From IMG/VR virus record IMGVR_UViG_3300042465_005589, positions 186,001 to 250,000 of that record: a stretch of DNA of 64,000 bases, one strand, 5' to 3'. The notes below the pieces were generated by a model. It was not told where the DNA came from and ran no database searches. It was given only the letters and a program-made list of their open reading frames with translations. Positions 33,143 through 51,500 of this stretch are shown here, in pieces (positions within the stretch are counted from its first letter, which is position 1; the number at the start of each line of letters is the position of its first letter). Both the position numbers and the translations under genes were made by a program.

Positions 33143-33173
33143 CAAAGATAAGAAAAAATAATATAACAGTCAA
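33143..33173 (-). promoter_or_regulatory. Bacteroidetes-type promoter heading the replication operon
   Basis: caaagata 33143-33150, caa 33171-33173; implies an almost leaderless mRNA. Confidence 0.6.
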
Positions 33174-33199
33174 TCTTCACAAGTTTTTCATTCCTATTA

Positions 33200-33206
33200 T
33201 ATTTAT
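33200..33206 (+). promoter_or_regulatory. Late motif TATTTAT heading the rightward structural block
   Basis: The same motif precedes many structural genes. Confidence 0.6.
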
Positions 33207-33223
33207 TGAGATAACCTAGAGAA

Positions 33224-33439
33224 ATGAGCACACAAATAACTATAAGTAATATTACCGGAGTATCTCCTTTTAAAGTGTATCTATGTGATAACCCTATTAC
33301 TTTATCAATATATATAGACACAATTTCAACGTTTCCATATAATGTGGTTATACCTCCTATTTGGAGTACGTTGACATCATTTAATATAAAAGTTATAGAT
33401 AATAATAATTGTGAATCAATTTTAAATTTAACATTATAA
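33224..33439 (+). CDS. Small beta-rich structural protein (paralogue of 36568-36873)
   Basis: ITISNITG.SPF.VYLCD...IKVIDNNNCE. Confidence 0.75.
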   Translation: MSTQITISNITGVSPFKVYLCDNPITLSIYIDTISTFPYNVVIPPIWSTLTSFNIKVIDNNNCESILNLTL

Positions 33440-33440: not shown

Positions 33441-34343
33441 ATGCCTTGTAGTTCTACATATTGCCTTTCAAACACTGGTTACCCAACATTCGACGATGTA
33501 TACTTTAGTGCCGGAACACATAATTCTCAACTATATTGGACCGGTCAAACTAATAGTTTATTTATCTATTATAATACCGGGTCAACCCAATGGTGTTTAT
33601 CAACCGTTTTAGATGGAGTTTGTTTATTATCAGGTCAATCACCTTGTTTTAACCCATGTCCGGATTTAGACGATGTTTATTTCTCTAGCGGAACATGTCC
33701 CACTCCGACCCCAACCCCAACAGCATATTGTTCTAGTTTAAATTTTTCAGCAATTTTTGATTGTGATGTTGACACACCAACTCCCACACCTACACCCACA
33801 TCCACTCCAACCTCAACGCCAACTCCAACCCCTACCAACCCATGTAATGTTGTTATAAGTGCAACAATTCAAAATATCCCAAATACTCCCACACCAACAC
33901 CAACATTAACACCTACACCTACTCCACCTGTTGCTCGTACTTGTACTTTTGAGGGAGCGGTAACTTTCAACACAATAGATGATAGTATTGTATGTCCGTA
34001 TAGTTATCAATTCCAAAGTTGTTATAATGGTATGATGTATTACACAACAAATCAAATTGTAACTCCAGGTAATATTCCAATTGAAAAGTTTCACGTTTAT
34101 CAAGCCAATGTTAATGGAATTGTTATGTGTGTTGGATATATTGGAGTTAATAATAACACTATTGGTAAAGACGATATTACACTATTATTAGGACCATACG
34201 GATTTTTAGATGATGGTGATTGTATATTATGTTCTCAATCAATAGTCCCTACACCAACACCAACACCGACACCAACAGAAACCATACTCCCATCAGAATG
34301 TACTGACTGTGGAATGGAAGGTTACTTATATAATAAAACTTAA
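33441..34343 (+). CDS. Cys-rich tail-associated protein with four Pro-Thr tracts
   Basis: PTPTPTPT linkers separating Cys-containing modules. Confidence 0.8.
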   Translation: MPCSSTYCLSNTGYPTFDDVYFSAGTHNSQLYWTGQTNSLFIYYNTGSTQWCLSTVLDGVCLLSGQSPCFNPCPDLDDVYFSSGTCPTPTPTPTAYCSSLNFSAIFDCDVDTPTPTPTPTSTPTSTPTPTPTNPCNVVISATIQNIPNTPTPTPTLTPTPTPPVARTCTFEGAVTFNTIDDSIVCPYSYQFQSCYNGMMYYTTNQIVTPGNIPIEKFHVYQANVNGIVMCVGYIGVNNNTIGKDDITLLLGPYGFLDDGDCILCSQSIVPTPTPTPTPTETILPSECTDCGMEGYLYNKT

Positions 34344-36904: not shown

Positions 36905-39900
36905 ATGAGATTAACAGATAGAAATTTTCCACCTTACATATCACCAGACGCATTAGTTCACATTGTATTAACAGGTGATACGACAGATAGCCCTCAAGGT
37001 TCATCCTTTAAAGCTACGATTGGTTCATTAGATAATGCCGTAATCATAACAGGAACCGGAATTAATTCGTCAGTTAGAAAATCAGTAGGGAATATTGCAT
37101 CAGGCAATTATTCAGCTGTTTTAGGTGGACAAAATAATTCAGGGACAACATACTTTTCAACCGTAGTTGGGGGATTTTGTAATATATCATCAGGTTACAA
37201 CTCATTTATTGGTGGCGGTAAATACAATACCTCTTCTGATTATATTTCAACAATTGGTGGTGGTAAATGTAACATTGCCTCTGGTAATACATCAACAATT
37301 GGGGGTGGTAGTGGTAATTTTTCTTCTTATTGTCGTTCAACAGTTGGGGGAGGCTCATATAACACCGCTTCCGGTAAAGCATCAGTAGTTAGTGGTGGTC
37401 AATCTAACACTTCTTCCGGTTTTTATTCAACAATTGGTGGTGGTAGTGTTAACACAGCGAGTAGTATATCATCAACAGTTGGTGGGGGGCAATATAATAT
37501 TGCTTGTGGTCAATTTTCTACAATTGGAGGAGGGGGAGGTTCATATTCATTAATTAGTAATAAAGCGTACGGTATTGGTTCTACAGTCGCAGGTGGGATG
37601 AGTAATCAGTCATTAGGTAATTATAGTACAATTGCCGGAGGTGCTAGTAATTTTAGTCTTTCCGGTACATCTACAATTGGAGGAGGGAGTAACAACTGTT
37701 CTACAAATTGTGGTTCCACAATTGGAGGGGGTGGTTTTAATACAAGTTCAGGATGTTACTCAACAATTGGTGGTGGAAATAGTAATTTATCAAACGGTAA
37801 TTGTTCAACAGTTAGTGGTGGTCATTTTAACAAAATATGTCAATCTCAAAATTATAATAATAATTATTTTTGTTTAGGCGATGTTATTGGGGGAGGAAAT
37901 TGTAACACCATAAATACAAATACTTATGTTGGTTATACTTGCACCGGTGGTAACACAATTGGTGGTGGTTACACAAATATTATAACACCATACCTTAACT
38001 TTAACACGATTGGTGGTGGTCAAAAAAATAAATCTTACGGTAATAGTTCAACAATTGCCGGTGGACAGGAAAATATAACTTCCTTTGGTTGTTCAACAAT
38101 TGGTGGGGGAATTTTAAATGTTGCAACAGGAAATACATCAACTATTGCGGGTGGTTGTGGAAACCAAGCAATAAATAGTTTCTCAACAATTGGTGGTGGT
38201 ACAAATAATATATCATGTTTTCAATCATTTGTTGGTGGAGGTAGATGTAATAAATCTTTAGGTAGTTATTCCACAATATCAGGAGGTCAAAATAATTGTA
38301 ATGTTCTCAGCCATTCTGTTATTGGTGGAGGATTTAATAATAAAATAACTTGTACATATTCAACAATTGCTGGTGGTAGAAATAATTGTGTATGCGGAAC
38401 AGATTCTTCAATAGTTGGTGGTTCCGGTAATAGCATCAATAGTAATGTATTGAATCCATTTAGGTCAGTAATTGCCGGTGGTGTGAATAATAAATTATGT
38501 CAATCATACGGGTTTATTGGAGGTGGTAGAGGCAATCAAATATCAGGTACAACTGGTATTGGTGAAGATTCTGTTATTGTCGGTGGATTCTATAATAAAA
38601 CATATGGTGTTAGAGCAGCAATCTTAGGGGGAGCACTTAACTGTTTAGGTTCAAACACTTATGGTAGTGGTCTTGTAAGTGGTAATAATAATAGAATTTC
38701 TGTACCATTTGGTATAATTGGTGGAGGACAAGTTAATGTAATATGTGGTGACCACTCAATTATTGGTGGTGGTGCGTTAAACTTTATTGGTAATTCATCA
38801 GTAACAAACTCATATTACGCAAATAATTGTTCAATAACTTTATATGGTAATCAGACATCGTCATTTAATGTTAACGACCTTTTACTAACATGGGATTTTA
38901 GTTGTTCAAGAAATGTTGTTATAACTGCATCTACGTATTCGGGCGGATATACTTATTTGGATGTTAGTGGGTCAACAATATTTGTAAATCCATTCACATC
39001 GTCCGCTCCAATAATTAGAAATTTAACAGATAGTTTACCAGGATTCCAAAATAGTTTTATTGGTGGTGGTTACGCAAATACCGTATCCGGAATTACAGGG
39101 TTTATAGGTGGAGGAGGTTATAATAAAGTCTCAGGAAATGGAGGAGTTATTGGTGGTGGTCGTTGTAATATATCAAGTGGTAATCAATCATCGATAACCG
39201 GAGGATATGATAACAAATCTATTGGGTGTCAATCATCAATCGTTGGTGGTGGTCGTAATTGCTCTATTGGACATTGTTCCTTTATTGGAGCTGGTTCATT
39301 CAACACCACATGTAATTATCATTCAACACTTACCGGTGGTAAGTGCAATATATCATCAGGTAATTATTCATTTATTGGTGGTGGTTCTGGAAATACCGTT
39401 TCCGGTGGTGTGTCATTTATTGGTGGGGGTCAATTTAATAGCGTACAAGGAATTAAATCAACAATTGGTGGAGGATGTAATAATATAATCTTTACATCCG
39501 GTTCAACTATAGGTGGTGGTATTACTAACACAATTTGGTCGCCTAATTCAACAATTACCGGTGGTCTTTCAAATATTATTTGTGCTGCCGCTAGTGATTC
39601 CTTTATCGGTGGTGGTGGTTGTAACATTGCATATAGTGGTAACTCAACAATTAGCGGAGGTTTTCAGAACAAAACATGTAATTGGGTTGCAACAATTGGT
39701 GGAGGTTTTAAAAACACTGCGTCAGGTGGTTGTTCAACAATTGGAGGTGGTTATAATAACTGCTCAATTGGTGCTTGTTCATTTGTTGGGGGAGGTAGTC
39801 AACACAGTGTCGCAGGGTGTGGTTCATCAATAGTTGGTGGTTCACTTAATATAATTTCGGGGAACTGTTCAACAATTGGCGGAGGAAATGGAAATATAAT

Positions 39901-40795
39901 TTGCAGCAACATGTCAACAATTGGTGGTGGTTGTCAAAATACAACTTGTGTAAGGTTTTCATTTATAGGAGGTGGTTATAAAAACTGTATAATTTGTCAA
40001 ACAGCGTATGGATACTCAACAATTGTAGGTGGATGGACAAATAGAACTCACGGTGAATCTAACTTTATTGGTGGTGGTCAATTCAACTGCATTGGAACAC
40101 CTGCGTTATCAGGTTCATCATTCTTATCTGTAATTGTTGGTGGAAATACAAATGGTGTATGTGATACAGCTTCTTTTATTGGTGGTGGTGATGGAAATGT
40201 CGTATTTAGCGGTTCTTCGGCAATAGTTGGTGGAGCCAGTAATATTTCATGTGCTGAACATTCTTTTATTGGAGGTGGGTGTGCAAACACTGTCACAGGT
40301 TGTTATTCATCAATTCTTGGTGGAGCCTATGGATGTGCACCTCGTTTTGGACAAAGGTCATTTGCTTCAGGTACTTGGGCTGGCGCTGGTTCAAGAGGTG
40401 CGTCACAACAAATTGATTTAGTAGGTAGAAATAAAACAACAAGTGGAAGTGCTGTCAACATATTTTTAGATGGGGCAAGTCAACGTATATCCGTAATTGC
40501 AGGAACTGCAATGTTTGTTACAATAAATATTGGTGGTATTAAATCAGATGGTTCTGCAGGAGCTCACTATATAAGAAAAGTCGCAATTAAAAATGTAGGT
40601 GGTGCAACTTCTTTAATTGGTGCGAGTCCGGTATCAGTTATTGGAACTGATGTGGAAGATAACGCATCTTATGACGTTGCAATTAGTGCTGACAATACTA
40701 ACGATGCTTTAGATATACAAGTCACAGGAGCTGTTGGTGAAACTTTAAGATGGACTGTCCATATTGAAGGTGTAGAAATAGTTTACGGAATATAA
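36905..40795 (+). CDS. Gly/Cys-rich repetitive tail fibre (beta-solenoid adhesin-like)
   Basis: 15-aa repeat STIGGGxxNxASGxx over about 1000 aa; globular C-terminal domain; late motif at 36879-36886. Confidence 0.8.
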   Translation: MRLTDRNFPPYISPDALVHIVLTGDTTDSPQGSSFKATIGSLDNAVIITGTGINSSVRKSVGNIASGNYSAVLGGQNNSGTTYFSTVVGGFCNISSGYNSFIGGGKYNTSSDYISTIGGGKCNIASGNTSTIGGGSGNFSSYCRSTVGGGSYNTASGKASVVSGGQSNTSSGFYSTIGGGSVNTASSISSTVGGGQYNIACGQFSTIGGGGGSYSLISNKAYGIGSTVAGGMSNQSLGNYSTIAGGASNFSLSGTSTIGGGSNNCSTNCGSTIGGGGFNTSSGCYSTIGGGNSNLSNGNCSTVSGGHFNKICQSQNYNNNYFCLGDVIGGGNCNTINTNTYVGYTCTGGNTIGGGYTNIITPYLNFNTIGGGQKNKSYGNSSTIAGGQENITSFGCSTIGGGILNVATGNTSTIAGGCGNQAINSFSTIGGGTNNISCFQSFVGGGRCNKSLGSYSTISGGQNNCNVLSHSVIGGGFNNKITCTYSTIAGGRNNCVCGTDSSIVGGSGNSINSNVLNPFRSVIAGGVNNKLCQSYGFIGGGRGNQISGTTGIGEDSVIVGGFYNKTYGVRAAILGGALNCLGSNTYGSGLVSGNNNRISVPFGIIGGGQVNVICGDHSIIGGGALNFIGNSSVTNSYYANNCSITLYGNQTSSFNVNDLLLTWDFSCSRNVVITASTYSGGYTYLDVSGSTIFVNPFTSSAPIIRNLTDSLPGFQNSFIGGGYANTVSGITGFIGGGGYNKVSGNGGVIGGGRCNISSGNQSSITGGYDNKSIGCQSSIVGGGRNCSIGHCSFIGAGSFNTTCNYHSTLTGGKCNISSGNYSFIGGGSGNTVSGGVSFIGGGQFNSVQGIKSTIGGGCNNIIFTSGSTIGGGITNTIWSPNSTITGGLSNIICAAASDSFIGGGGCNIAYSGNSTISGGFQNKTCNWVATIGGGFKNTASGGCSTIGGGYNNCSIGACSFVGGGSQHSVAGCGSSIVGGSLNIISGNCSTIGGGNGNIICSNMSTIGGGCQNTTCVRFSFIGGGYKNCIICQTAYGYSTIVGGWTNRTHGESNFIGGGQFNCIGTPALSGSSFLSVIVGGNTNGVCDTASFIGGGDGNVVFSGSSAIVGGASNISCAEHSFIGGGCANTVTGCYSSILGGAYGCAPRFGQRSFASGTWAGAGSRGASQQIDLVGRNKTTSGSAVNIFLDGASQRISVIAGTAMFVTINIGGIKSDGSAGAHYIRKVAIKNVGGATSLIGASPVSVIGTDVEDNASYDVAISADNTNDALDIQVTGAVGETLRWTVHIEGVEIVYGI
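37080..40370. repeat. Degenerate 45-nt coding repeat array
   Basis: Recurrent tcaacaattggtggtgg core; about 65-70 units estimated from length; non-repeat insert at about 38790-39040. Confidence 0.9.
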
Positions 40796-40797
40796 AA

Positions 40798-40968
40798 TTA
40801 TTCCGTTTTTTTACCTAAACCCTCATATATCCTTAAAAGTTTTAAAGATTCATTGTAGTTTTTTTCTAATCTATCTAATTCTTTTTCGTTGACACCTTTT
40901 TCACATGCGTCCTCGTAAATTTTTTTAGATTCAGTTACCAAATTCGATATTGTTCTAATCAGTTTCAT
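40798..40968 (-). CDS. Small protein with putative head-targeting leader, 56 aa
   Basis: Manual translation MKLIRTISNLVTESKKIYEDACEKG...; TATTTATA at 40973-40980; missed by the ORF track. Confidence 0.7.
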   Translation of the reverse strand: MKLIRTISNLVTESKKIYEDACEKGVNEKELDRLEKNYNESLKLLRIYEGLGKKTE

Positions 40969-41046
40969 ATTATATAAATATCATCATCTTTACCATTTAT
41001 TACATTTGATTGTCATTTATATTTAATTAAAAACGTTTTATATAAT

Positions 41047-42027
41047 ATGATTTTTGTTACAGCACAACCTGATGTACCTTATTTCCATTGGCAAATAATG
41101 GTGTATATACACAACTTTATTGAACATGGTGTTCCTCCAAATCAAATCCACGTATTACTTGGAATAATAAATGAAGATGGTAAACCAACTGAAGAATCTT
41201 TAAAATTAAAAGATTCCGGAGTTAACGTACATTATTATATCGATAATAGACCTCAAAAACATTACATCCCAACAGTTAAACCCTTTTTAATTTCAAAATG
41301 GTTAAAAGATTTTCCTGAACATGGTAAATGTTTCTTCTTACATGACTCTGACATTATATTCAGAAAATTACCAAATTTTGATAGTTTATTAAATGATGAT
41401 ATTACATATTTATCCGACACAATAGGATATATTGGTTATAGATATATTATGGATTGTTGTGAACGTTATGAAAATGCTCACCCAACATCAGGTAAAGGTC
41501 AATTATTAGAAGAAATGACCGATGTTGTTGGCGTTTCAGTTGAGTGTATTGAATGTAATCAAGAAAATTCGGGAGGTGGTCAATACTTAATTAAAAACAC
41601 CGATTGGTTATTATGGGAAAAAATATACGCAGATTGCGTTCCACTGTATGACCAAATGTTAGACTATCAAAAAAGATTTCCAATTAGTCCAGGCGAAATT
41701 CAATTTTGGACCGCCGAGATGTGGTCACTATTATGGAATTTGTGGTTACATGGAATTGAGACAAAAATAACCCCTGAATTTGATTTTTCATGGGCAACAG
41801 ATTCAATAAAAATATATGAAGATAAACCTATTCTTCACATGGCAGGAGTAACAGATAATCAAAAACAAGATAAATTTTATAAAGGAGATTTTATTAATCT
41901 TAACCCATTAGACAAATTAAAAGAGAATATTAATTTTTTCGATTATGTCAGTTCTCAGAGTTCAACAAAAAAATATGTAGAAGTTATGAAATCTTTGGTG
42001 AAAAAACAAATAAAGGATTATTTATAG
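41047..42027 (+). CDS. GT-A glycosyltransferase resembling plant peptide O-glycosyltransferases SGT1 (GT96) / HPAT (GT95)
   Basis: YFHWQ, KPFLISKWL, LHDSDIIFR (DxD), GGGQYL, WTAEMW and ILHM occur in the same order as the motifs I recall for SGT1/HPAT. Confidence 0.7.
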   Translation: MIFVTAQPDVPYFHWQIMVYIHNFIEHGVPPNQIHVLLGIINEDGKPTEESLKLKDSGVNVHYYIDNRPQKHYIPTVKPFLISKWLKDFPEHGKCFFLHDSDIIFRKLPNFDSLLNDDITYLSDTIGYIGYRYIMDCCERYENAHPTSGKGQLLEEMTDVVGVSVECIECNQENSGGGQYLIKNTDWLLWEKIYADCVPLYDQMLDYQKRFPISPGEIQFWTAEMWSLLWNLWLHGIETKITPEFDFSWATDSIKIYEDKPILHMAGVTDNQKQDKFYKGDFINLNPLDKLKENINFFDYVSSQSSTKKYVEVMKSLVKKQIKDYL

Positions 42028-42047: not shown

Positions 42048-44291
42048 ATGATATATTATTTTCAAACATGTTGTGTCAAATTTAACGAATCCGACAATTA
42101 TTTCGGAGTAAATGACATTACATTAATATTACCTATTTTAGGGGAAGTTTATTCTATTGAAACCCTTTCATTTAGTGGGTGCGCTTATTTAATATCAGGA
42201 CCAATCCCATCAGGGTCGTTAATTTACGCAGGGAATAAAACTATCTCAACATTATATAACGATTGTCAAGATTGTTTGGATAACGCTTATGGTTGTTTTC
42301 CTCCTCCTCCTCCACAGCCAGCAATTAGTTATATTCAATCCAATGAATGTGATGTAATTACATTATTTCCAATGACTGTTGAATGTGATGTTATTAATCC
42401 TTCAACTGCAGGTAGTCGTGATGGTAGAGCATCTATATCTATAACAGGAGGAACACCTCCATATACAGTTACTTGGGGTGATGGTAGTATTTCACCTGCT
42501 ATCATGGATTTACAATCGGGTTCATATCCAGCAACTATTGTTGATTATTATGGTGATTTTACCGCCAATACAATATGCGTATTAACAGGACCAACCGCAA
42601 CACCAACACCTACATTAACCAAAACCCCAACACTAACACCAACACCAACACTAACGGTTACACCAACATTAACTAGAACTCCAACACTAACACCTACATT
42701 AACTACAACACCTACGGTTACACCTACATTAACACCTACATTAACATCAGGAATACCACCAACACCAACAATTACCCAAACTATAACACCTACATTGACT
42801 ATAACACCTACATTAACCAAAACACCAACACCTACCCCAACACCAACAATAACAATAACACCAGAAGTACCATCATACAACGAAACATTCACAATGATTG
42901 CAAGAAGTTTGAATAGTTTTGCCCCTGTTAGTGGTTTTGAATTTAGAATTGACGCATCACTGCCATTTAGAATTGTTTGGGGTGATGGTAATACAGATAA
43001 TTACCCTTCAGGTATTAATTATATATCACACATATATTCAACACCTTATACTGGAAATATATTAATTCAAACATCAAATTTAACATCTATAACCCAAATT
43101 ATACCTAAAAATGTTAACCCTCAAATAAATGAGAATAGTGTTAGATATTTAGAAATTGAAACTTCTCAATTAAATCTTTTAGATGGGTTAGTTGGAATGG
43201 GTGACGGTAATGGACTAAATTATTTTTTATCAGGTGATATAAGTTTATTACCGACAACATTATTATCATTAATTTCACGGTGGTCTAATTGTTCAGGTAA
43301 TATTGCAAATTTACCACCTAATATACAATATTTTCATATTAATTTGTTCTTTAATAATTATCCAAACCAATTAAATACTATTTCAGGAAATGTTTCTAAT
43401 TTACCAACAACATTAAAAACTATTATTTTAGGTGGTATAAATACCATAACAGGTAATATAAATAATATTCCTTGCCCATCACTTGAAAAAATTATGATTG
43501 CTGGTTCAAACACTATTACCGGTGATATATCATTAATGTCGACACCTAATTTAGATACCATAAATATATATGGTAATAACACAATATTTGGTGATTTAGG
43601 CGGATTATCAAATAGTGTTATGGATATAAGATTGGCTGGTGGAAATACTGTTACTGGTGATATATCAACATTACCAACAAGTTTATCACACATTTATGTT
43701 GAAGGTACTAATACTCTTTATGGTAATATTAACACATTAAACTATTCAATATTATCAACTTTACAAATTTATGGAAATAATAATATTACTGGTAATATTA
43801 GTTCATTAAATTTAAAACTAGGAGCGATTTTTGAGTTAAAGGGTAACAATACATTAACTGGTAATATTGGTAGTATAGGTAGTACTTATAACTATAACCA
43901 ACTAGCTATATACGGTAACAACACAATTTATGGTAATATTCAAGATTTACCTTCTAATTCAAAAAATGTTAGAATACAAGGTAATAACGTCATTTCAGGT
44001 GATTTATCATTAGTTCATTTAAATATCCAATATTTATATATATACGGTAACAACACAATATCAGTATTCTCAAATAGTACAAGAATTTTTACAGATTTAA
44101 GAATAATTGAAATAGTGGGAAGCGGCTTTAATAGTACTAATGTTGATAAATTATTAACAAGTTATGCTAATTCAACTTGGGTTAGTAGTAAATTATTAAA
44201 AATAAAAGGCACATCATCACCTAAATACACAAACACTTCATCATACAACACACTTCAAACAACAAAAGGAGTGGGAATAACAATATCATAA
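42048..44291 (+). CDS. Modular tail appendage protein: Cys domain, SprB repeat, Pro-Thr linker, PKD-like domain, LRR solenoid
   Basis: DGRASISITGGTPPYTVTWGDG; about 90-aa TPT tract; IVWGDG..HIY; repeats IYGNNTITGNISSL; late motif at 42019-42026. Confidence 0.8.
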   Translation: MIYYFQTCCVKFNESDNYFGVNDITLILPILGEVYSIETLSFSGCAYLISGPIPSGSLIYAGNKTISTLYNDCQDCLDNAYGCFPPPPPQPAISYIQSNECDVITLFPMTVECDVINPSTAGSRDGRASISITGGTPPYTVTWGDGSISPAIMDLQSGSYPATIVDYYGDFTANTICVLTGPTATPTPTLTKTPTLTPTPTLTVTPTLTRTPTLTPTLTTTPTVTPTLTPTLTSGIPPTPTITQTITPTLTITPTLTKTPTPTPTPTITITPEVPSYNETFTMIARSLNSFAPVSGFEFRIDASLPFRIVWGDGNTDNYPSGINYISHIYSTPYTGNILIQTSNLTSITQIIPKNVNPQINENSVRYLEIETSQLNLLDGLVGMGDGNGLNYFLSGDISLLPTTLLSLISRWSNCSGNIANLPPNIQYFHINLFFNNYPNQLNTISGNVSNLPTTLKTIILGGINTITGNINNIPCPSLEKIMIAGSNTITGDISLMSTPNLDTINIYGNNTIFGDLGGLSNSVMDIRLAGGNTVTGDISTLPTSLSHIYVEGTNTLYGNINTLNYSILSTLQIYGNNNITGNISSLNLKLGAIFELKGNNTLTGNIGSIGSTYNYNQLAIYGNNTIYGNIQDLPSNSKNVRIQGNNVISGDLSLVHLNIQYLYIYGNNTISVFSNSTRIFTDLRIIEIVGSGFNSTNVDKLLTSYANSTWVSSKLLKIKGTSSPKYTNTSSYNTLQTTKGVGITIS

Positions 44292-44292: not shown

Positions 44293-45318
44293 ATGGAATA
44301 TAATTTTTGTCTAAATATTAGTATTAATAACTTACAAATTCATTTTAACCCAAATGGATTAGATGTTAATGGATATAATCAATGGGTATCTGATGATTAC
44401 ACATATTCAATTAATTGGGACACCTCATTAAGTAGATGGAAATTGAATGGTGGTAATCTAACTTATTTGGTGTTTTCTTCTTTACCATCTTCTGTACCCC
44501 CTCTTAACTCTTGGTATGTATTAGGTGCTAACGGAACTGTTTATGCTAACGAAGGTGTTTGTAATCCATTAGGTATTAATTCATTAACCTATAGTGTTAA
44601 TCAACCAATATGTTCATGTGATGGTAATTTAATGGTAACTGTTTCAGGTGGTTACCCACCATATCAATATTCAATTGATAATGGTGTTACGTATTATAAT
44701 TCACCAATGTTTAGTCAATTATGTTCAGGAATTTATAGCGTTAAAGTTATTGATGTAAGTGGAAACACTAATAGTGATAATGTAACATTAAATGAACCTA
44801 CACCACCAACAGTTTATAGTGTAAAATTAACAACAACATCAACAAATCCGGTTAATAATAATACAACGTTGACTAATCAATATACAACAACGGTTAGTGT
44901 ATCACCTGAATTACCAAGTGGTACTGTAATCAATTTTAACATATCACACAATAACAAATTTTACTATTCTCCAAGTGGTATAACTGCAAGTTTGGTTACT
45001 AGTAGTGCCTTATATAAAAATGATAATTTAATACTAACCACATCAAACGGTACTGTAACATCAGATGCAAATTTTAATACAATTCAAGGATGTCAAAACT
45101 TAATAAAGTATTTAGATTTCTATACCGAAACTTGGAACTCATTAACCTTTACAAATTCAGATTCAATTGTTATTAACACGGTTACAACAATAACTAACAA
45201 TGGACCATTAACACCTTGTACGTATACATTAAGTGAGGACTTATATAATATATACAACGCAACTATAAGTGGTTGTGGATGTTGTGTAGTAGAAATTATT
45301 AACGTTAATCAAAAATAA
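44293..45318 (+). CDS. Tail-associated protein with an SprB-like repeat
   Basis: CSCDGNLMVTVSGGYPPYQYSIDNG...LCSGIYSVKVID; C-terminal CGCC. Confidence 0.78.
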   Translation: MEYNFCLNISINNLQIHFNPNGLDVNGYNQWVSDDYTYSINWDTSLSRWKLNGGNLTYLVFSSLPSSVPPLNSWYVLGANGTVYANEGVCNPLGINSLTYSVNQPICSCDGNLMVTVSGGYPPYQYSIDNGVTYYNSPMFSQLCSGIYSVKVIDVSGNTNSDNVTLNEPTPPTVYSVKLTTTSTNPVNNNTTLTNQYTTTVSVSPELPSGTVINFNISHNNKFYYSPSGITASLVTSSALYKNDNLILTTSNGTVTSDANFNTIQGCQNLIKYLDFYTETWNSLTFTNSDSIVINTVTTITNNGPLTPCTYTLSEDLYNIYNATISGCGCCVVEIINVNQK

Positions 45319-45343: not shown

Positions 45344-47809
45344 ATGGGATACATATTAAAAAATACACAAGGTTTACTTAGTACAAGACTAACTGATACC
45401 GGAAGACAAAAATTATCACAGGGTAGTTTTAATATCTCTTATTTTCAAGTAGGAGATAGTGAGGTTTCTTACAATACATTAACAGGAACGTCATACAACC
45501 AATTTACCACAAAAATTCTTGAACCAGCCTTTAACGCTCAAAATTCGACAGGAGCACCTGAATATAACAAACAAAACGTTAAATACCCATACTATATTGA
45601 TGGAATAACAGGTAACACTTATGGAATCCCATACATGGCGTCTATCCCTCAATCGGTATATAATAGAGCCGCAATGAGAGGATTTTTCACCGGAGACACA
45701 ACCGCAACAACTTTCACATGGAGCGCATTAACAAATAGCCAATATACAATTAATTCTAACTATCTCGTAGATATGTCTACATTAACGGGTGGTAGTGTTA
45801 TTCAATTAGTATATTCAGGGTGTAATTCAAATATTGTAAGATTACCATCTATTGGTGACTTTGTTACAATATATTATGATGGTCAAGGAGAATACAATTG
45901 TTATTGTGAACCAGGATTAACACCTACCCCAACCTATACCCCAACATCAACTTACCAAGTCACTAATACACCAACACCAACTCCAACACCAACATATACA
46001 GGATGTGAAACACCAACTCCAACACCAACCCCAACAATAAGTTGTTCTACAACACCTGTACCTACCCCAACACCACCAAATTGTGAGATGTCAATGAGTA
46101 GTTGTTATTCAATCTTAACTTATAAAATTGTAGATATTTGTAACGGTAACTATACATTAGATAGACCTACACCTGATTTTTCAAACTTTTCAAGTGGATG
46201 TTTTGCCAGAGTATTAGTATATCCGCCAAACATGACAACATTATATGACAGTATCACACCTAACTCACATTGGAATCAAAATGTTATTAATTTTGAATCT
46301 TTATGTAGTACAGATGAATCAGATGTTAAAATTTGGAATATGAACATTCCCTGGTCTGAAGACCCTGCCGGTTTATATAATTCAACATATAAAGGTTATC
46401 CTTACTTTGGTTCGGCGTCTTATATGGGTAGTAAAGAATACTTTGGATATATGTCCGATAGTGGTCAAACAGATACTGGAGTTGTTTATTACTATAACTC
46501 ATTTGACGAGACAGTAGTTGTTCAACCTAGTGAACAAAAATCTATAGCAATTATTCATTATACTAATCAAGCGATTGATTTCTTTTATGGTGAAAAATTC
46601 GCCTTTGAACCTTACGACCCGGCAAACCCTTCTGATACAACAGGAGAAGCCCGCAATTTTAGATTACACTTGCCGTGGTTAATGTGGCATAAAAATCCAA
46701 ATTGTTGTAAAGGTCAAACATTTTGGGTTGACCCACCAGGATTTGATGAATATCTATTATTCCAACCATATTACATTGAGTCAACTAAAAATAGTGATAT
46801 GAATACTCCCGGTATTAGATATTACCAACTATGGGACACTAATGCGAATGATAATGGATTACCAAGTAGAATCGGTAAAGTATTCCCTGATTCACAAATT
46901 ATTGTAATTGATGATGAAGAAATTATTGCCGCTATGTCTTACAAGTCAAATCGTAATTGGACATTACCGGCACCTAAGGTTTCATTAACAACACCAAATA
47001 CTTGTGTGGTTGAAAATAATCAACCTGTTGTAAAAGGTATTTTAAGTGCTAACACTGAATATATGTACGTTACTTACAGATTTAGTAATACCGATATTTT
47101 TACAAATTCATTACACTGTAATTATTATACTAAAATTCAAGGACCTAACATTGATTGTGGTTCAGTTGCGTCACAAAACGTTTCCATTAGATTTGGTGCG
47201 GAATTCCCTTGTTTAAATCAACCTGTTGTTATCCCAACAACTACAACAACAACTACAACAACCACAACATTATGTCCATCATGTGATATAATAACAGGGT
47301 TCTACGCAGACACATTACAAATTATTTGTCAAAAAGTTATTGGTACAAGTAGACCTGACCCAGCTGAATGGAAAATTATTGATTTTACCTCACAGATAAG
47401 CGCAACAACAATTAATGGATATCTAACCGTAGATAGTTTAACAGGAACCACATTTACAATCACTGAAGAAAACTACGCAGCCGCTGACGATTATGATTTA
47501 AACGATTTTATTCCATTAGTACCTAACGGAACAACAACACCTTCATTAAATTTTGGAGATGAATATTATTTCTATGGTTCATTAGAAACCGATATCCAAG
47601 CAACCATTTATGAAATGAAATATAAAATAAATCTTGGACAAGCCGAGTTTCAATCAACCTCAAACCCTACATGGACTAAGGGGACAAATTCATATATTAC
47701 AGAAATTGGTCTTTACGATTCTGATATGAACCTTATGATTGTATCAAAGCTACAATCCCCTGTATTAAGACAAGGTATTCAACAGTTTTTAGTTAAATTT
47801 GATTTCTAA
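45344..47809 (+). CDS. Tail-collar / baseplate fibre-attachment protein with Pro-Thr and poly-Thr inserts
   Basis: N-terminal LTDTGRQKL..GSFNISYFQVGDSEVSY; C-terminal YITEIGLYD..MIVSKLQSP; late motif at 45332-45339. Confidence 0.7.
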   Translation: MGYILKNTQGLLSTRLTDTGRQKLSQGSFNISYFQVGDSEVSYNTLTGTSYNQFTTKILEPAFNAQNSTGAPEYNKQNVKYPYYIDGITGNTYGIPYMASIPQSVYNRAAMRGFFTGDTTATTFTWSALTNSQYTINSNYLVDMSTLTGGSVIQLVYSGCNSNIVRLPSIGDFVTIYYDGQGEYNCYCEPGLTPTPTYTPTSTYQVTNTPTPTPTPTYTGCETPTPTPTPTISCSTTPVPTPTPPNCEMSMSSCYSILTYKIVDICNGNYTLDRPTPDFSNFSSGCFARVLVYPPNMTTLYDSITPNSHWNQNVINFESLCSTDESDVKIWNMNIPWSEDPAGLYNSTYKGYPYFGSASYMGSKEYFGYMSDSGQTDTGVVYYYNSFDETVVVQPSEQKSIAIIHYTNQAIDFFYGEKFAFEPYDPANPSDTTGEARNFRLHLPWLMWHKNPNCCKGQTFWVDPPGFDEYLLFQPYYIESTKNSDMNTPGIRYYQLWDTNANDNGLPSRIGKVFPDSQIIVIDDEEIIAAMSYKSNRNWTLPAPKVSLTTPNTCVVENNQPVVKGILSANTEYMYVTYRFSNTDIFTNSLHCNYYTKIQGPNIDCGSVASQNVSIRFGAEFPCLNQPVVIPTTTTTTTTTTTLCPSCDIITGFYADTLQIICQKVIGTSRPDPAEWKIIDFTSQISATTINGYLTVDSLTGTTFTITEENYAAADDYDLNDFIPLVPNGTTTPSLNFGDEYYFYGSLETDIQATIYEMKYKINLGQAEFQSTSNPTWTKGTNSYITEIGLYDSDMNLMIVSKLQSPVLRQGIQQFLVKFDF

Positions 47810-48449: not shown

Positions 48450-51400
48450 TTATTGACATACTCCTGAATTTACATGAATTTCTAATGTTGATGTTGCTGC
48501 AACAGTAACATTATAAAATTGAACTTGATAATAACCGGGAGTTGTAATTGGGGCGATTTCACTCGCATAAAGTGAAGCATCCACATATAATAAAACACAT
48601 TGTGAGTTTGCCACACTAGATAAGAGTGTCACAGTTAAATTTTGATTAACTAACCCTAATTGAGCACCCAATAAAGGATTTGACACAGTTACTGGGAAAC
48701 TATATGAACTATCATATAGATAAAACGTCTGTGGTTGGATATTTGTAACTTGAGATTCTTCTTTTTGAATACTAACAAGGAAATTTCTTGGTTTTTCAAT
48801 ATTAATATCACTCTCACATTCTAGACAACAATCTTCAGATGAATAAATTGTATTACTAATTGTTGTGAAATAATTAGTATTATAAATCTGAACATTTAAT
48901 TGAGGTGGTAATGTTGGTTCTCCATTATAAATATTTTTTAATTTCCAACACGATACATCACCTCTAACGTCAGTAGAACTAAATCCATCACCAATTAATA
49001 AATTAGGTAATACTAATATAGGTTGTAATATATAATATGGCTCACCATCCTCTCCAAGAATACACGATGCGTATAAATACCACAATGGTAATGGTGTTGG
49101 TGTAACCGTTGGTGTAACAGTTATTGTTGGCGTAACAGTTATTGTTGGTGTAACAGTTGGGGTTGATGTAGGGGTTGGTGTTAATGTTAATGTTGGAGTT
49201 ATAGTTGGCGTTACAGTTATTGTTGGTGTTGGAGGTAATCCAGGTGTCCACGTCGGGGTTAATGTTGGTGTAACAGTTAATGTTGGTGTCACAGTTAATG
49301 TTGGAGTTATAGTTAAAGTTGGTGTTATAGTTATTGTTGGTGTTGGTGTAGGAGCTAAACCACAATATTGACATGAGATATTATACTCAATAAACACATT
49401 AACATTAACATCTGTTGCTACCAAATATTGTTCTTCACATTTTGCAATTATTTGAATCCCATTATTTAATGGGTCAATATTAACTTGAGCAACTTGGTCA
49501 AAACTTTCTAATAAAGCAACTAAAGCGTTAAAATATTCTTCATCAGTTGGATAATGGTTTAAAGCATAACTTGTATAAAATTCTGAAGTTTCTGTTACAC
49601 TACCAATAGTTGCAACAATATTAAAGATTGCTTGATTAAGTAAACAATTAGTATAACCGGAAGTTAAATCATAATAACCCTCATTTAACATTTCTTTTGG
49701 ACCTTTTTTAACTAATTCGTTAATATTTTCAAAATCACTATTACAAATATTAAACGTTTGAAATGATGATATTGAATCAAATCCATCAATTATCACTTGT
49801 CTAATTTTAACACATCCATCACTATCTGTCACTTGTAAACTATAAGTTCCAGCACTTAAGCTATTTAAATAATACCCTGTCTGCCCATTTACATTATTAC
49901 TCCATAATAAAGTAAAAGGTGGTGCACCATTTGTAATATATGCAGATACCGTACCATCATTACCATTATTGGCATCAGTACTAGATAATAAAAAATCAAC
50001 ATTTTCAGAGGTATCAATTACAAAATTAATAATTTGTGCACAACCCGGAACCGCATCATCAATTTCTGCTGCGTACACACCTGAAAATAAATTATTAAAT
50101 GTCGTTGCACTAGTTTGAATTATTTGTAATTCACTACCAATATTAACGGTATAAGGTGGTGTACCACCTGAAATACTAATCTCCACTGAACCATTTTGTA
50201 AATCACAAGTTGTACCTGTTGTACTCGCACTTAAAGTAAAAGGTGACGTAGATACTATTGTATATGAATTAGTATATACACAAGCACCATTATCAGATAT
50301 TGTTAAATCGTAAGTATCAGCCGCCAAATTAGTAAATTGCCAAACAGAAGAATTAGTTACTTGTGTTTGAGTGTCTCCATTTGAATTTACTAGTGTATAT
50401 GTGTAAGGAGATTGACCACCTAATAGAGTCATTTTTATTTTTCCATTATTTCCACAATCCGCATTAATTGTGTCAATAGTAATAATTGAAAACCCATTTG
50501 GCGTTAAGACCGATATTGACCCAACAACAGAACATAAAGCAGCATCAGTCACTTTTATAGAAAATAATCCTGAACCAATATTTTGAAAAGTTTGTGAAGA
50601 ACTAAATGAAACATTAATTTGACCTGTAGACGCAGAATAATAATATGGTCCTGTCCCTCCTGATATAGTTACCGTAACTTCACCATCAGATGAAAAACAA
50701 GACGGTGGTACGCTCGTTAAAATTGCCGCAACACCTAATGCCGGTACCAACCCTACTGTCGCACTTTGAGATAACGTACAATTAGTACTATCGGTTATAG
50801 TTACACTATACGTACCATTTGTTAACCCTGTAATAAAGTCAGTTGTTTCGTTATTTGACCATAAATAAGTAAACGGTGGGTTACCTGTTAAACCCGTCAC
50901 ATATATTTTACCAGATTCAACGCTATTACACCCCGAATCTTCAACAACATAAAAACCCCAAGTAAGAGATGATGACGATTTTATAATAATAGTTTCTGAC
51001 ATTCCTGTACAACCTCCACCATCATCGGCAACAACATAATAAATACCTGGCGATAACGCCGGTGGGGTTGTGAATGTATTATAACCCGTTGTAGCAGATG
51101 TTACAAACCCTGTTAATGTATTATATAAATAAAAATCAGCAGAACCATAGAAACTACTTGTTTGAGCCGTCAACGCCCCATTATTAAAACTACAGGTAGT
51201 ATTTTGTTGACCTATAATACTTACACATGTACCACTAGAAATATTAACATTTACCGGTAAGACATTTTGAGATGGTGATGAACAAGAATCGATAACATTA
51301 AAGGTATATGTACCCGCAGATAATGTTGTTGCGGTATATCCTGTCACACCAGAACCTAACGCTATTGTCCCTAAAGCGGGACTTATCCATTGTATAGTAT

Positions 51401-51500
51401 AATCCGGAGCAGTACCGTAGATATCTACACTAAAAACCCCTGAGTTTGTATTTGAACAATCTCCCGTTATACTTAAATTTACACTTAAACTACAAGCCAT
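48450..51500 (-). CDS. SprB-repeat tail protein with Pro-Thr linker and Cys-rich C-terminal domain
   Basis: Roughly eight C...G.I.V...GG..PY.Y.WS....L.AGTY...VTD units; TPT tract at about 49085-49350. Confidence 0.82.
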   Translation of the reverse strand: MACSLSVNLSITGDCSNTNSGVFSVDIYGTAPDYTIQWISPALGTIALGSGVTGYTATTLSAGTYTFNVIDSCSSPSQNVLPVNVNISSGTCVSIIGQQNTTCSFNNGALTAQTSSFYGSADFYLYNTLTGFVTSATTGYNTFTTPPALSPGIYYVVADDGGGCTGMSETIIIKSSSSLTWGFYVVEDSGCNSVESGKIYVTGLTGNPPFTYLWSNNETTDFITGLTNGTYSVTITDSTNCTLSQSATVGLVPALGVAAILTSVPPSCFSSDGEVTVTISGGTGPYYYSASTGQINVSFSSSQTFQNIGSGLFSIKVTDAALCSVVGSISVLTPNGFSIITIDTINADCGNNGKIKMTLLGGQSPYTYTLVNSNGDTQTQVTNSSVWQFTNLAADTYDLTISDNGACVYTNSYTIVSTSPFTLSASTTGTTCDLQNGSVEISISGGTPPYTVNIGSELQIIQTSATTFNNLFSGVYAAEIDDAVPGCAQIINFVIDTSENVDFLLSSTDANNGNDGTVSAYITNGAPPFTLLWSNNVNGQTGYYLNSLSAGTYSLQVTDSDGCVKIRQVIIDGFDSISSFQTFNICNSDFENINELVKKGPKEMLNEGYYDLTSGYTNCLLNQAIFNIVATIGSVTETSEFYTSYALNHYPTDEEYFNALVALLESFDQVAQVNIDPLNNGIQIIAKCEEQYLVATDVNVNVFIEYNISCQYCGLAPTPTPTITITPTLTITPTLTVTPTLTVTPTLTPTWTPGLPPTPTITVTPTITPTLTLTPTPTSTPTVTPTITVTPTITVTPTVTPTPLPLWYLYASCILGEDGEPYYILQPILVLPNLLIGDGFSSTDVRGDVSCWKLKNIYNGEPTLPPQLNVQIYNTNYFTTISNTIYSSEDCCLECESDINIEKPRNFLVSIQKEESQVTNIQPQTFYLYDSSYSFPVTVSNPLLGAQLGLVNQNLTVTLLSSVANSQCVLLYVDASLYASEIAPITTPGYYQVQFYNVTVAATSTLEIHVNSGVCQ

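What the first reader, a model, noticed from the sequence alone, without database searches (positions are those of the whole stretch)
41047..42027. Plant SGT1/HPAT-like peptide O-glycosyltransferase inside the tail operon: candidate virion O-glycosylation system
Seen: a 326-aa DxD enzyme lies between the long fibre gene and the Pro-Thr/LRR appendage gene, with four Pro-Thr-linker proteins within about 8 kb. Recalled knowledge: its ordered motifs YFHWQ / KPFLISKWL / LHDSD / GGGQYL / WTAEMW / ILHM parallel plant and algal peptidyl-serine galactosyltransferase SGT1 (Y.DWQ / NKP...HWL / LDAD / GG / W.SEMY / IHY) and hydroxyproline arabinosyltransferase HPAT, which glycosylate Pro-rich extensins. 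The host's general O-glycosylation is periplasmic and so would not reach assembling virions. Inference: the phage glycosylates Thr (or hydroxyproline, if a prolyl hydroxylase lies elsewhere) in its own tail linkers, giving an extensin-like coat for rigidity, protease resistance or adhesion. A TACATTTG element at 41001-41008 hints that the enzyme is made before its substrates.
Basis: partly seen in the sequence, partly recalled or inferred. Interest (0 to 1): 0.9.

Follow-up and report, generated by a model that had tools for sequence, protein, structure and literature searches.

The report
Phage enzyme that sugar-coats threonine tracts
This huge-phage gene encodes a soluble sugar-transferring enzyme from a large, unnamed viral family whose gene almost always sits beside virus-particle proteins carrying threonine-rich tails or linkers, so many phages probably coat their particles with sugars; no experiment has tested this.

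Summary
The ORF at 41047-42027 (+, 326 aa) is real and intact, and all six quoted motifs are present. They fall on invariant columns of a 40-sequence alignment. A confident AlphaFold model (pLDDT 94.6) has a GT-A glycosyltransferase fold. Its nearest solved structures are the retaining families GT24 (UGGT), GT8 and GT6.

No Pfam, NCBIfam or PADLOC model matches. Only phrog_4417 ("unknown function") does. The family has 964 clusters at 50% identity.

The key result is comparative. In unrelated phages and prophages the gene lies next to virion proteins that end in poly-threonine tails: major capsid, major tail and small tail-annotated proteins.
- 48 of 50 informative species loci show this.
- Among close homologues of one tail protein, 12 of 12 loci with the enzyme have the tail and 0 of 14 without it do, with at least 4 independent switches.
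- A capsid family shows the same split: 68 loci have both, 5 have neither, and none is discordant.

In the window the flanking appendage proteins carry long Thr-Pro tracts and a T11 run.

Virion threonine O-glycosylation is therefore well supported by inference. The plant SGT1/HPAT homology could not be tested, the hydroxyproline variant is unlikely, and the TACATTTG timing hint is chance.

The parts
41047..42027 (+). 326-aa soluble GT-A-fold glycosyltransferase-like enzyme. It belongs to an unnamed phage family (phrog_4417).
   Evidence: ORF and translation. phrog_4417 E 5e-69. AlphaFold pLDDT 94.6. Foldseek top hits are GT24/GT8/GT6 glycosyltransferases at probability 1.0. No membrane segment (highest 19-residue hydropathy mean 0.68).
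41344..41352 (+). Codons of the DxD motif (D100-S-D102), the presumed metal and nucleotide-sugar binding site.
   Evidence: D100 and D102 are invariant in 40 sequences. The motif directly follows strand E95-98 of the model, as in GT-A enzymes.
41566..41583 (+). NSGGGQ, a glycine-rich loop between the DxD motif and the WTAEMW helix.
   Evidence: G177 and Q179 are invariant and G176 is nearly invariant.
41707..41724 (+). WTAEMW motif containing the invariant E224, a candidate catalytic or acceptor-side residue.
   Evidence: W221, T222, A223, E224 and M225 are invariant. The motif starts helix 220-234 of the model.
41830..41847 (+). ILHMAG with the invariant H264, a candidate C-terminal metal-binding histidine.
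   Evidence: H264, A266 and G267 are invariant. The motif lies on strand E262-264. Its geometry could not be checked because no model coordinates were available.
42048..44291 (+). 747-aa appendage protein directly downstream of the enzyme gene. It is the most likely acceptor in the window.
   Evidence: Weak LRR_4 hit. T/P-rich tract. The gene at this position is hypervariable among relatives, and most versions carry T/P-rich stretches.
42585..42848 (+). About 90 residues of (T-P/L/K/V-T) repeats (residues 180-267) within the 747-aa protein; the proposed glycosylated linker.
   Evidence: Tract. Thr codons are mixed (ACA/ACT/ACC/ACG), so this is not a DNA microsatellite.
45344..47809 (+). 821-aa protein with Cys-flanked PT linkers and a poly-Thr run; a likely acceptor.
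   Evidence: Tracts. Both tract positions are conserved in 19 orthologues at about 65-95% identity while their length varies.
45911..46078 (+). PT linkers (residues 190-245) of the 821-aa protein.
47237..47269 (+). T11 poly-threonine run (residues 632-642). This is the same kind of tract that accompanies the enzyme in Firmicutes phages.
33441..34343 (+). 300-aa protein with four (PT)n tracts (residues 81-279); a possible acceptor.
   Evidence: It is conserved in the closest relatives.
48450..51500 (-). 1016-aa SprB-repeat protein with TPT-type tracts (residues 716-803, nt 49092-49355); a possible acceptor.
   Evidence: SprB repeat E 7.7e-15. Tracts.
36905..40795 (+). 1296-aa fibrous protein upstream of the enzyme gene, resembling a UspA1-type trimeric adhesin. 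It has no Thr tract.
   Evidence: PDB 3pr7 E 2.1e-19 and 3ntn E 8.7e-6. No tract.
44293..45318 (+). 341-aa protein with weak SprB-repeat and Hoc-like Ig signals and a short PTPPT.
   Evidence: All hits are below the curated cut-offs.
40785..40806 (+). Terminator-like hairpin followed by a T-run, just after the 1296-aa ORF. It separates that gene from the enzyme gene.
40800..40967 (-). Conserved 56-aa ORF divergent from the enzyme gene. It fills the apparent 250-nt gap.
   Evidence: Translation. It is 60-100% identical at the same position in more than 30 related loci.
40994..41025 (+). Bipartite promoter-like element CATTTATTA-N14-TATATTTA, ending 22 nt before the ATG.
   Evidence: Unique in the window, with 0 expected. 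Both halves recur upstream of the gene in several relatives of about 70% identity, whereas TACATTTG itself does not.

Best explanation
What it is: the gene encodes a soluble, cytoplasmic, metal-dependent (DxD) glycosyltransferase with a GT-A fold. It belongs to a large, uncharacterised virus-borne family.

How it most likely works: late in infection it takes a host nucleotide-sugar and O-glycosylates threonine hydroxyls in unstructured Thr-rich tracts of the phage's own virion proteins.
- In small Firmicutes phages these tracts are C-terminal poly-Thr tails on the major capsid protein, the major tail-tube protein and a small tail-annotated (possibly decoration) protein.
- In this huge phage they are the Thr-Pro/Thr-Leu linkers and the T11 run in the adhesin-like appendage proteins that flank the gene. 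The first candidate is ORF 42048-44291, then 45344-47809, 33441-34343 and 48450-51500(-).
- The result would be a mucin-like sugar brush on exposed parts of the particle.

Shown: the fold, the conserved catalytic-type motifs, the lack of a membrane segment, fusions of this domain to other glycosyltransferases, and near-perfect covariation of the gene with Thr tracts.

Inferred: that sugar is actually transferred, that Thr is the acceptor, that the mechanism is retaining (giving an alpha linkage, by analogy with the GT24/GT8/GT6 neighbours), which sugar is used, and what the coat does (stability, protease or immune shielding, adhesion).
For: Fold and active-site motifs:
- AlphaFold model pLDDT 94.6, pTM 0.92.
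- 259 PDB matches at E<=0.001. The top 50 listed are all glycosyltransferases, nearly all GT-A: UGGT GT24 catalytic domain (E 2.5e-7), WbbM, LARGE1, XXYLT1, LgtC, glycogenin and the ABO transferases.
- Viral models annotated as GT8-like follow two family members in BFVD.
- Invariant D100xD102, G-loop, E224 and H264 occur in the canonical GT-A order.

Domain fusions: family members of 500-790 aa join this domain to GT2, Glyco_transf_7C, GT25-like (below the curated cut-off), methyltransferase-like (also below cut-off) or radical-SAM/SPASM domains. This is typical of multi-step glycan builders.

Gene position: the gene lies directly after the major tail protein in phiFL1A, phiCTP1 and 1706, and one small ORF after it in SA2. 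It lies directly after the capsid gene in bIL285 and one gene (PLE3_8) after it in PLE3; in VPE25 it follows unannotated proteins upstream of the tail genes. In phage 1706 the neighbours are annotated 'structural protein' but this gene is 'unknown'.

Thr tracts beside the gene: those neighbours end in poly-Thr, for example ten to twenty T/S residues at the C-terminus.
- Nearly all of 80 Enterococcus/Lactobacillus-type loci show it; the few without a listed tail lacked a motif match or upstream sequence.
- 48 of 50 informative loci from distinct bacterial species show it, 44 of them in the ORF immediately upstream by the script's rule (two more have it about 0.55 kb upstream), and nearly always at the extreme C-terminus.
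- Five diverse metagenomic representatives show it.

Natural contrasts:
- Homologues of one tail protein: 12 of 12 with the enzyme gene have tails on both capsid and tail proteins. In the 14 without it, 0 have tails and 0 of 267 ORFs have poly-T.
- The trait pair switches at least 4 times on the tail-protein tree.
- A capsid family gives 68 loci with both, 5 with neither and 0 discordant.

The window itself: T-rich tracts are confined to the genes around the enzyme, are positionally conserved in orthologues and use mixed Thr codons.
Against: - No biochemical or proteomic evidence of glycosylation exists for any member. The papers reachable here say nothing about this family.
- In the window's own clade every relative has both the enzyme and the tracts, so there is no internal contrast.
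- Pro-Thr linkers are common in Bacteroidota-type surface proteins whether or not they are glycosylated. The window's acceptors are therefore assigned by analogy and adjacency.
- TM-scores to known glycosyltransferases are only 0.4-0.5, and no sequence model of any CAZy family matches.
- Two of 50 species loci show no tract in the sequence available.
- Active-site geometry could not be measured because no model coordinates were available.
Confidence: 0.7

Rival explanations
1. The enzyme does glycosylate virion proteins, but in this huge phage its acceptors are poly-Thr tails on capsid or tail proteins encoded outside the window. The neighbouring Pro-Thr tracts would then be ordinary flexible linkers.
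For: In the small phages the acceptors appear to be major capsid and tail proteins. No such genes were recognised in the window. PT linkers are widespread in surface proteins of Bacteroidota (established knowledge).
Against: Across the family the tract-bearing gene is nearly always adjacent to the enzyme gene. Here the adjacent gene has a 90-residue Thr-rich tract. ORF 45344-47809 carries a pure T11 run that is positionally conserved.
Confidence: 0.12
2. The enzyme modifies the same Thr tracts but transfers something other than a simple sugar from a nucleotide-activated donor, for example a sugar-phosphate. Alternatively it primes a longer polymer.
For: The GT-A-like superfamily includes enzymes with other donor chemistries. 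Some relatives are fused to radical-SAM/SPASM domains and one sits next to an APS-kinase gene, which hints at elaborate modifications.
Against: The nearest structures are all Leloir glycosyltransferases. The commonest fusions are to GT2, GT7C and (below cut-off) GT25-like domains.
Confidence: 0.08
3. The enzyme alters host envelope glycans (LPS, teichoic acid or capsule) to block superinfection, as many prophage glycosyltransferases do.
For: Many family members lie in prophages. WbbM (O-antigen) and LgtC (lipo-oligosaccharide) are among the structural neighbours.
Against: The gene sits inside structural-gene blocks, not near integrase or lysogeny genes. It occurs in the virulent phage 1706, in the ~86-kb phage VPE25 and in Herelleviridae. 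It has no membrane segment. Host-envelope modification gives no reason for lock-step gain and loss with Thr tails.
Confidence: 0.05
4. One reading: a homologue of plant SGT1/HPAT that glycosylates Ser or hydroxyproline in an extensin-like manner, with a prolyl hydroxylase encoded elsewhere.
For: GT95 is predicted to be GT-A-like and is said to be related to GT96 (PMC8476585, PMC8012813). One family member lies on a giant-virus-like contig, a possible route between phages and eukaryotes.
Against: No Pfam or other profile hit appears even at E up to 10. [quoted passage not shown] The protein is soluble, unlike the plant enzymes. Most partner tracts contain no proline at all. No 2OG oxygenase was seen among the 16 neighbouring ORFs scanned against Pfam.
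Confidence: 0.04
5. A DNA- or nucleotide-modifying glycosyltransferase that protects the phage genome from restriction.
For: Phage glycosyltransferases often do this (PMC12619734 summarises the field).
Against: Where genes are annotated, the gene lies among virion structural genes rather than base-modification genes, except in Iacchus, where recombinase and sigma-factor genes lie upstream. This role would not explain covariation with Thr tails.
Confidence: 0.02

Closest known systems
Mycobacteriophage virion glycosylation (Che8 and relatives; Freeman et al. 2023, as summarised in PMC12619734 and PMC11256854)
   Same: Phage-encoded cytoplasmic glycosyltransferases decorate the phage's own particle. 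The glycans sit at the C-termini of capsid and tail-tube subunits. These are the same two proteins that carry the poly-Thr tails here.
   Different: It is a different enzyme family: no Mycobacterium phage is among the 77 tblastn hits in 50,697 records. The mycobacteriophage genes lie near the 3' end of the genome rather than inside the structural block (PMC11256854). The acceptor here is a homopolymeric Thr or Thr-Pro tract. The host range here is far wider: Bacillota, Bacteroidota-type huge phages, a Saccharimonadales MAG and a giant-virus-like contig.
Retaining GT-A glycosyltransferases GT24 (UGGT), GT8 (LgtC, glycogenin, XXYLT1, LARGE1 domain) and GT6 (ABO)
   Same: These are the best structural matches (probability 1.0, E 1e-7 to 1e-5). 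They share the DxD motif after a beta-strand and an H-x-x-G-type histidine near the C-terminus.
   Different: TM-scores are only 0.4-0.5 and identity 9-15%. No Pfam GT8 or GT24 model matches. Most of those enzymes act on glycans, not directly on peptide threonine.
Mucin-type O-glycosylation by polypeptide GalNAc-transferases (GT27)
   Same: A GT-A, DxD, retaining enzyme adds sugar to dense Thr/Pro-rich unstructured tracts and produces a hydrated brush. This is the closest functional analogy.
   Different: That pathway is eukaryotic, operates in the Golgi lumen, and uses a membrane-anchored enzyme with a lectin domain. No sequence relationship was shown here.
Plant and algal SGT1 (GT96) and HPAT (GT95), the extensin glycosyltransferases
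   Same: They are peptide O-glycosyltransferases acting on Pro-rich structural proteins.
   Different: They are membrane-anchored ER/Golgi enzymes whose acceptors are Ser or hydroxyproline. Homology could not be tested with the tools at hand, and no profile hit was found.
Cytoplasmic glycosylation of serine-rich repeat adhesins in Gram-positive bacteria (GtfA/B plus GT8-type extenders; established knowledge)
   Same: Long Ser/Thr-rich low-complexity tracts of a surface fibre are glycosylated in the cytoplasm, and further glycosyltransferases extend the glycan.
   Different: The initiating enzyme there is a GT-B (GT4) protein. The substrates are bacterial adhesins exported by an accessory Sec system, not virion proteins.
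Virus-encoded glycosylation in giant viruses (chloroviruses and mimiviruses; PMC4691112)
   Same: The virus brings its own cytoplasmic glycosyltransferases to decorate capsid or fibril proteins. One member of this family lies on a giant-virus-like contig.
   Different: The characterised giant-virus enzymes belong to other families, and the linkage types differ.

Membership tests
GT-A fold nucleotide-sugar glycosyltransferases (superfamily) | Single Rossmann-like alpha/beta/alpha domain with a central sheet, recognisable by structure comparison. | tested here: met
   Model pLDDT 94.6. 259 PDB matches at E<=0.001; the top 50 listed are glycosyltransferases, nearly all GT-A, at probability 1.0.
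GT-A fold nucleotide-sugar glycosyltransferases (superfamily) | DxD motif at the end of a core beta-strand. | tested here: met
   D100 and D102 are invariant in 40 sequences and follow strand 95-98.
GT-A fold nucleotide-sugar glycosyltransferases (superfamily) | Metal-binding geometry (DxD plus C-terminal His) and sugar-transfer activity. | not testable with these tools
CAZy GT8 / GT24 (sequence families) | Significant match to the family's sequence profile (Pfam Glyco_transf_8 or the UGGT catalytic domain). | tested here: not met
   No such hit for any of 40 members even at E up to 10. The PDB profile search found only a chance hit. The resemblance is structural only.
CAZy GT95 / GT96 (HPAT / SGT1) | Sequence or structural homology to HPAT or SGT1. 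| not testable with these tools
No seed sequence, solved structure or AlphaFold DB library was available. Pfam gave nothing.
CAZy GT95 / GT96 (HPAT / SGT1) | Membrane-anchored enzyme of the secretory pathway. | tested here: not met
   The highest 19-residue hydropathy mean is 0.68, and the protein starts directly with the first beta-strand.
CAZy GT95 / GT96 (HPAT / SGT1) | Acceptor is Ser or hydroxyproline in Ser-Hyp motifs. | tested here: not met
   The partner tracts across the family are poly-Thr, often with no Pro or Ser. This is inferred from genomic association, not from chemistry.
Phage virion glycosylation systems (mycobacteriophage type) | A phage-encoded glycosyltransferase plus acceptor sites at the C-termini of capsid and tail-tube subunits. 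| tested here: inconclusive
   The genomic signature is met in the small-phage members of the family. Glycans were not observed. In the window the tracts are internal linkers of appendage proteins.
Phage virion glycosylation systems (mycobacteriophage type) | Homology to the mycobacteriophage glycosyltransferases. | tested here: not met
   No Mycobacterium phage record is among the 77 tblastn matches at E<=1e-3.
PHROG phrog_4417 | Full-length profile match. | tested here: met
   E 5.2e-69, residues 1-317 on profile positions 1-291 of 293, annotated 'unknown function'.

The most novel reading that the evidence does not exclude
This is the founding example of a new family of polypeptide threonine O-glycosyltransferases carried by viruses. 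It is spread across phages of Bacillota, Bacteroidota-type huge phages, a candidate-phyla-radiation (Saccharimonadales) genome bin and at least one giant-virus-like genome. The enzyme and a poly-Thr or Thr-Pro acceptor tract move together as a two-part module that gives capsids, tail tubes and fibres a mucin-like sugar coat. Many well-used laboratory and therapeutic-candidate phages, such as Enterococcus VPE25-like and Staphylococcus 6ec-like phages, would then be glycosylated without anyone having noticed. A deeper link to the eukaryotic extensin or mucin peptide glycosyltransferases stays open.
Probability: 0.6. Interest if true: 0.85.

Novelty: new variant of a known kind. Interest (0 to 1): 0.8.

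Why it matters
Phages have generally been regarded as unglycosylated; the recent mycobacteriophage case was treated as an exception (PMC11256854). If this family does what the genomics implies, sugar-coated virions are common, including in phages of Enterococcus, Staphylococcus, Lactococcus and Lactobacillus that are used in dairy research and phage-therapy work.

A glycan brush on capsid and tail would bear on several open questions:
- antibody recognition and clearance of the particle;
- stability and protease resistance;
- adherence to mucus;
- possibly recognition of capsid and tail proteins by bacterial defence sensors.

The enzyme-plus-tail module is small and appears portable, so the idea is directly testable in laboratory strains. 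It could also become a tool for site-directed O-glycosylation of proteins in bacterial cytoplasm. In addition, the family would get a function: it has 964 clusters at 50% identity, and every named record seen calls it hypothetical or gives it an uninformative label.

Tried and rejected
Sequence-profile routes to a named family all failed:
- Pfam on the protein and on all 40 alignment members.
- NCBIfam and PADLOC.
- PDB by single sequence and by profile; the profile search gave only a chance hit to a 94-aa toxin chain at E 0.68.

Testing the SGT1/HPAT link:
- No seed sequence could be fetched.
- The word-indexed protein search cannot reach that far, so the third search was not spent.
- The tail of the 964-hit list is not shown, and no AlphaFold DB library was available.
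- The step is left for others.

Other dead ends:
- Megablast of the 12-kb neighbourhood against isolated phages found nothing.
- The TACATTTG and TANNTTTG promoter idea gave chance-level counts, and the motif is not conserved beyond close relatives.
- Ten full-text searches found no paper on this family or on poly-Thr tails of phage capsid or tail proteins. The Freeman 2023 paper itself is not held and was cited second-hand.
- A within-clade contrast for the huge phages was not possible. All 80 loci returned for the window clade are close relatives and carry the gene, and most also carry Pro-Thr tracts.
- Active-site distances could not be measured because the model file is not exposed.
- The second structure job was not used. 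Modelling the variable downstream protein from a shallow alignment seemed unlikely to add anything.
Full report
**1. The observation**

The window has about 30% G+C. It is identical over the fetched 21-kb locus to part of a 318-kb IMG/VR viral contig, so it comes from a huge phage.

ORF 41047-42027 (+) is an intact 326-aa reading frame. In a 40-sequence alignment that spans 30-95% identity they coincide with invariant or nearly invariant columns: F13, W15, K78, P79, D100, D102, G176, G177, Q179, W221-M225 and H264.

The gene is flanked by two large ORFs:
- Upstream is a 1296-aa ORF that resembles the trimeric adhesin UspA1.
- Downstream is a 747-aa ORF with a weak LRR signal.

Four ORFs within about 9.5 kb carry Pro-Thr tracts.

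**2. What the protein is**

No Pfam, NCBIfam or PADLOC model matches it, and no PDB sequence does either. The only profile hit is phrog_4417, annotated "unknown function".

With the 40-sequence alignment, AlphaFold gives a very confident model (pLDDT 94.6, pTM 0.92). Foldseek places it among glycosyltransferases of the GT-A fold. The best solved matches are:
- the UGGT catalytic domain (GT24);
- WbbM, LARGE1 and XXYLT1;
- LgtC and glycogenin (GT8);
- the ABO transferases (GT6).

All have probability 1.0, E-values of 1e-7 to 1e-5 and TM-scores of 0.4-0.5.

The invariant residues lie in the canonical GT-A order: DxD after a beta-strand, a glycine loop, a conserved acidic residue at the start of a helix, and a C-terminal histidine on a strand. 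The order itself is established knowledge of GT-A enzymes. There is no hydrophobic segment, so the enzyme is soluble.

**3. Size and spread of the family**

A profile search of 1.84 billion representative proteins finds 964 clusters at 50% identity, 570 of them at E<=1e-30. Many members are 500-790 aa long. Those fuse this domain to GT2, Glyco_transf_7C, GT25-like, methyltransferase-like or radical-SAM/SPASM domains; the GT25 and methyltransferase matches fall below Pfam's curated cut-offs. That pattern is expected for one step in a glycan-building pathway.

Among 50,697 isolated phage genomes, 77 carry the gene. They are phages of Lactobacillus, Enterococcus, Staphylococcus, Lactococcus, Clostridium, Arcanobacterium and Chryseobacterium. 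None is a Mycobacterium phage. Every record calls the gene hypothetical or gives it an uninformative label.

**4. The decisive evidence: association with threonine tracts**

*Gene position.* In unrelated siphophages the gene sits inside the structural-gene block.
- It lies directly after the major tail protein in phiFL1A, phiCTP1 and 1706, and one small ORF after it in Staphylococcus SA2.
- It lies directly after the capsid gene in bIL285 and one gene after it in PLE3. In VPE25 it follows unannotated proteins upstream of the tail genes.
- These contexts come, with protein identities confirmed.
- In phage 1706 the neighbouring genes are annotated as structural proteins but this one is not.

*Tails on the neighbours.* Translating those neighbours shows that they end in runs of ten to twenty threonines. 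Where the adjacent gene lacks such a tail, the tail protein of the same module has one.

*How general the pattern is.*
- Nearly all of 80 Enterococcus/Lactobacillus-type viral loci show it; the few without a listed tail lacked a motif match or upstream sequence.
- Five diverse metagenomic representatives show it.
- 48 of 50 informative loci from different bacterial species show it. Typically the capsid protein, a protein of about 110 aa and the tail protein all carry C-terminal poly-Thr tails, and the enzyme gene follows.

*Natural contrasts.*
- Among close homologues of the phiFL1A tail protein, the 12 loci with the enzyme gene all have poly-Thr tails on both capsid and tail proteins.
- The 14 loci without the enzyme gene have none, and 0 of their 267 ORFs has a poly-Thr tract. 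Fisher's test gives p = 1e-7, though the loci are not independent.
- On a tree of the tail-protein cores the paired trait changes state at least four times, including between well-supported sister sequences.
- A capsid family gives 68 loci with both features, 5 with neither and none discordant. Four further loci are cut off by contig ends and are uninformative.

The enzyme and the Thr tail are therefore gained and lost together.

**5. The window itself**

Here the tracts are not C-terminal tails. They are internal linkers in large adhesin-like proteins:
- about 90 residues of TPTLT-type repeats in the gene directly downstream;
- Cys-flanked PT linkers and a T11 run in ORF 45344-47809;
- PT tracts in ORFs 33441-34343 and 48450-51500(-).

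In 19 orthologues of the 821-aa protein both tract positions are conserved while their lengths vary. Thr codons are mixed, so selection acts on the protein and this is not DNA slippage. The gene downstream of the enzyme is hypervariable among relatives, and most versions carry T/P-rich stretches.

All relatives in this clade have both features. The window's acceptors are therefore assigned by analogy with the rest of the family and by adjacency.

**6. Mechanism proposed**

A soluble DxD enzyme made in the infected cytoplasm uses a host nucleotide-sugar to O-glycosylate threonines in exposed, unstructured tracts of virion proteins. This gives a mucin-like brush. Fused or neighbouring enzymes extend the glycan in some lineages.

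The fold, the motifs, the fusions and the covariation are shown. The transfer itself, Thr as the acceptor, a retaining mechanism (suggested only by the nearest structural families), the sugar and the benefit to the phage are all inferred.

Thr is the only residue common to all partner tracts.

**7.

*Plant SGT1/HPAT homology.* This could not be tested.
- No seed sequence or structure was reachable, and no profile hit appeared.
- The literature says GT95 and GT96 are related (PMC8012813). [quoted passage not shown]
- The plant enzymes are membrane-anchored; this one is not.

*TACATTTG.* The motif is at chance level and is not conserved beyond the closest relatives.

*What the upstream "gap" really contains.*
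- a terminator-like hairpin;
- a conserved 56-aa ORF on the other strand;
- a bipartite promoter-like element that is conserved in some relatives.

None of this gives any evidence about timing.

*'Tail operon'.* The label is only partly backed. The neighbours look like fibres or adhesins, but no canonical tail gene was recognised. The genes upstream on the other strand are replication and repair genes.

**8. Comparison with what is known**

The closest known system is mycobacteriophage virion glycosylation. There, phage glycosyltransferases put glycans on the C-termini of capsid and tail-tube subunits (Freeman et al. 2023, as cited in PMC12619734 and PMC11256854).

The logic and the target proteins are the same. 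The enzyme family, the gene location, the homopolymeric Thr acceptor and the breadth of hosts all differ.

No paper reachable here describes this family or the poly-Thr tails.

**9. Verdict**

I rate this a new variant of a known kind, with high interest. All functional claims are inferences from comparative genomics.

Noticed in passing
window 40800-40967 (-): The apparent 250-nt gap upstream of the enzyme gene holds a 56-aa ORF on the opposite strand. It is conserved at 60-100% identity at the same position in more than 30 related loci. Its function is unknown, and it is too short for the default ORF list.
   Followed up: partly
window 40994-41025 (+): The bipartite element CATTTATTA-N14-TATATTTA is unique in the window. 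Both halves recur upstream of the enzyme gene in several relatives of about 70% identity. Another clade has AATTCACTTT-N~17-(T)ATAATTTT at the same place. It may be a phage promoter shared with the divergent small ORF.
   Followed up: partly
window 36905-40795 (+): The 1296-aa ORF matches the head and stalk of the Moraxella trimeric autotransporter adhesin UspA1 (3pr7 E 2e-19; 3ntn E 9e-6). The phage may therefore carry a trimeric adhesin-like fibre.
   Followed up: no
L201:5135-7513 (protein P0280): A 792-aa family member lies on a contig with RING-finger, XRN exonuclease, PARG and M24 peptidase genes. That gene content looks like a giant virus of eukaryotes. The protein has a Q/P-rich N-terminus and its own poly-Thr run.
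   Followed up: no
L200:2659-4635 (protein P0313) and L200:4671-5144: One family member is fused to a radical-SAM/SPASM domain. It is followed by an APS-kinase gene and preceded by two proteins consisting largely of poly-Thr. This hints at further modification, perhaps sulfation, of the glycan or tract.
   Followed up: no
L089:5117-5930 (Staphylococcus phage SA2): The major tail protein ends in T8-P. An overlapping ORF in another frame encodes about 55 more residues that are mostly threonine. This looks like a programmed frameshift that makes a longer Thr-tailed form.
   Followed up: no
phage records GQ478084.1 (phiFL2A) and GQ478083.1 (phiFL1C), hits H44-H46: In these two Enterococcus phages the enzyme gene matches in two pieces and is annotated as two genes. 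It may be frameshifted or mis-sequenced. They are potentially natural knock-outs to compare with phiFL1A.
   Followed up: no
L004, L009, L010 (about 11002-11559): In some relatives of 93-94% identity the gene downstream of the enzyme is only 186 aa instead of about 750 aa, with the same N-terminus. The gene at this position is hypervariable across the clade, as receptor-binding proteins often are.
   Followed up: no
L283 (CAYGYN010000024.1): A 5.3-kb contig binned as 'Candidatus Woesearchaeota archaeon' encodes a protein 62% identical to the window enzyme. It is more likely a mis-binned phage contig than an archaeal gene.
   Followed up: no
window 24992-33321 (-): The genes upstream on the opposite strand are replication and repair functions: SbcC-like, SbcD-like, exonuclease and primase. 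The appendage/enzyme cluster therefore starts abruptly at about 33.4 kb.
   Followed up: partly
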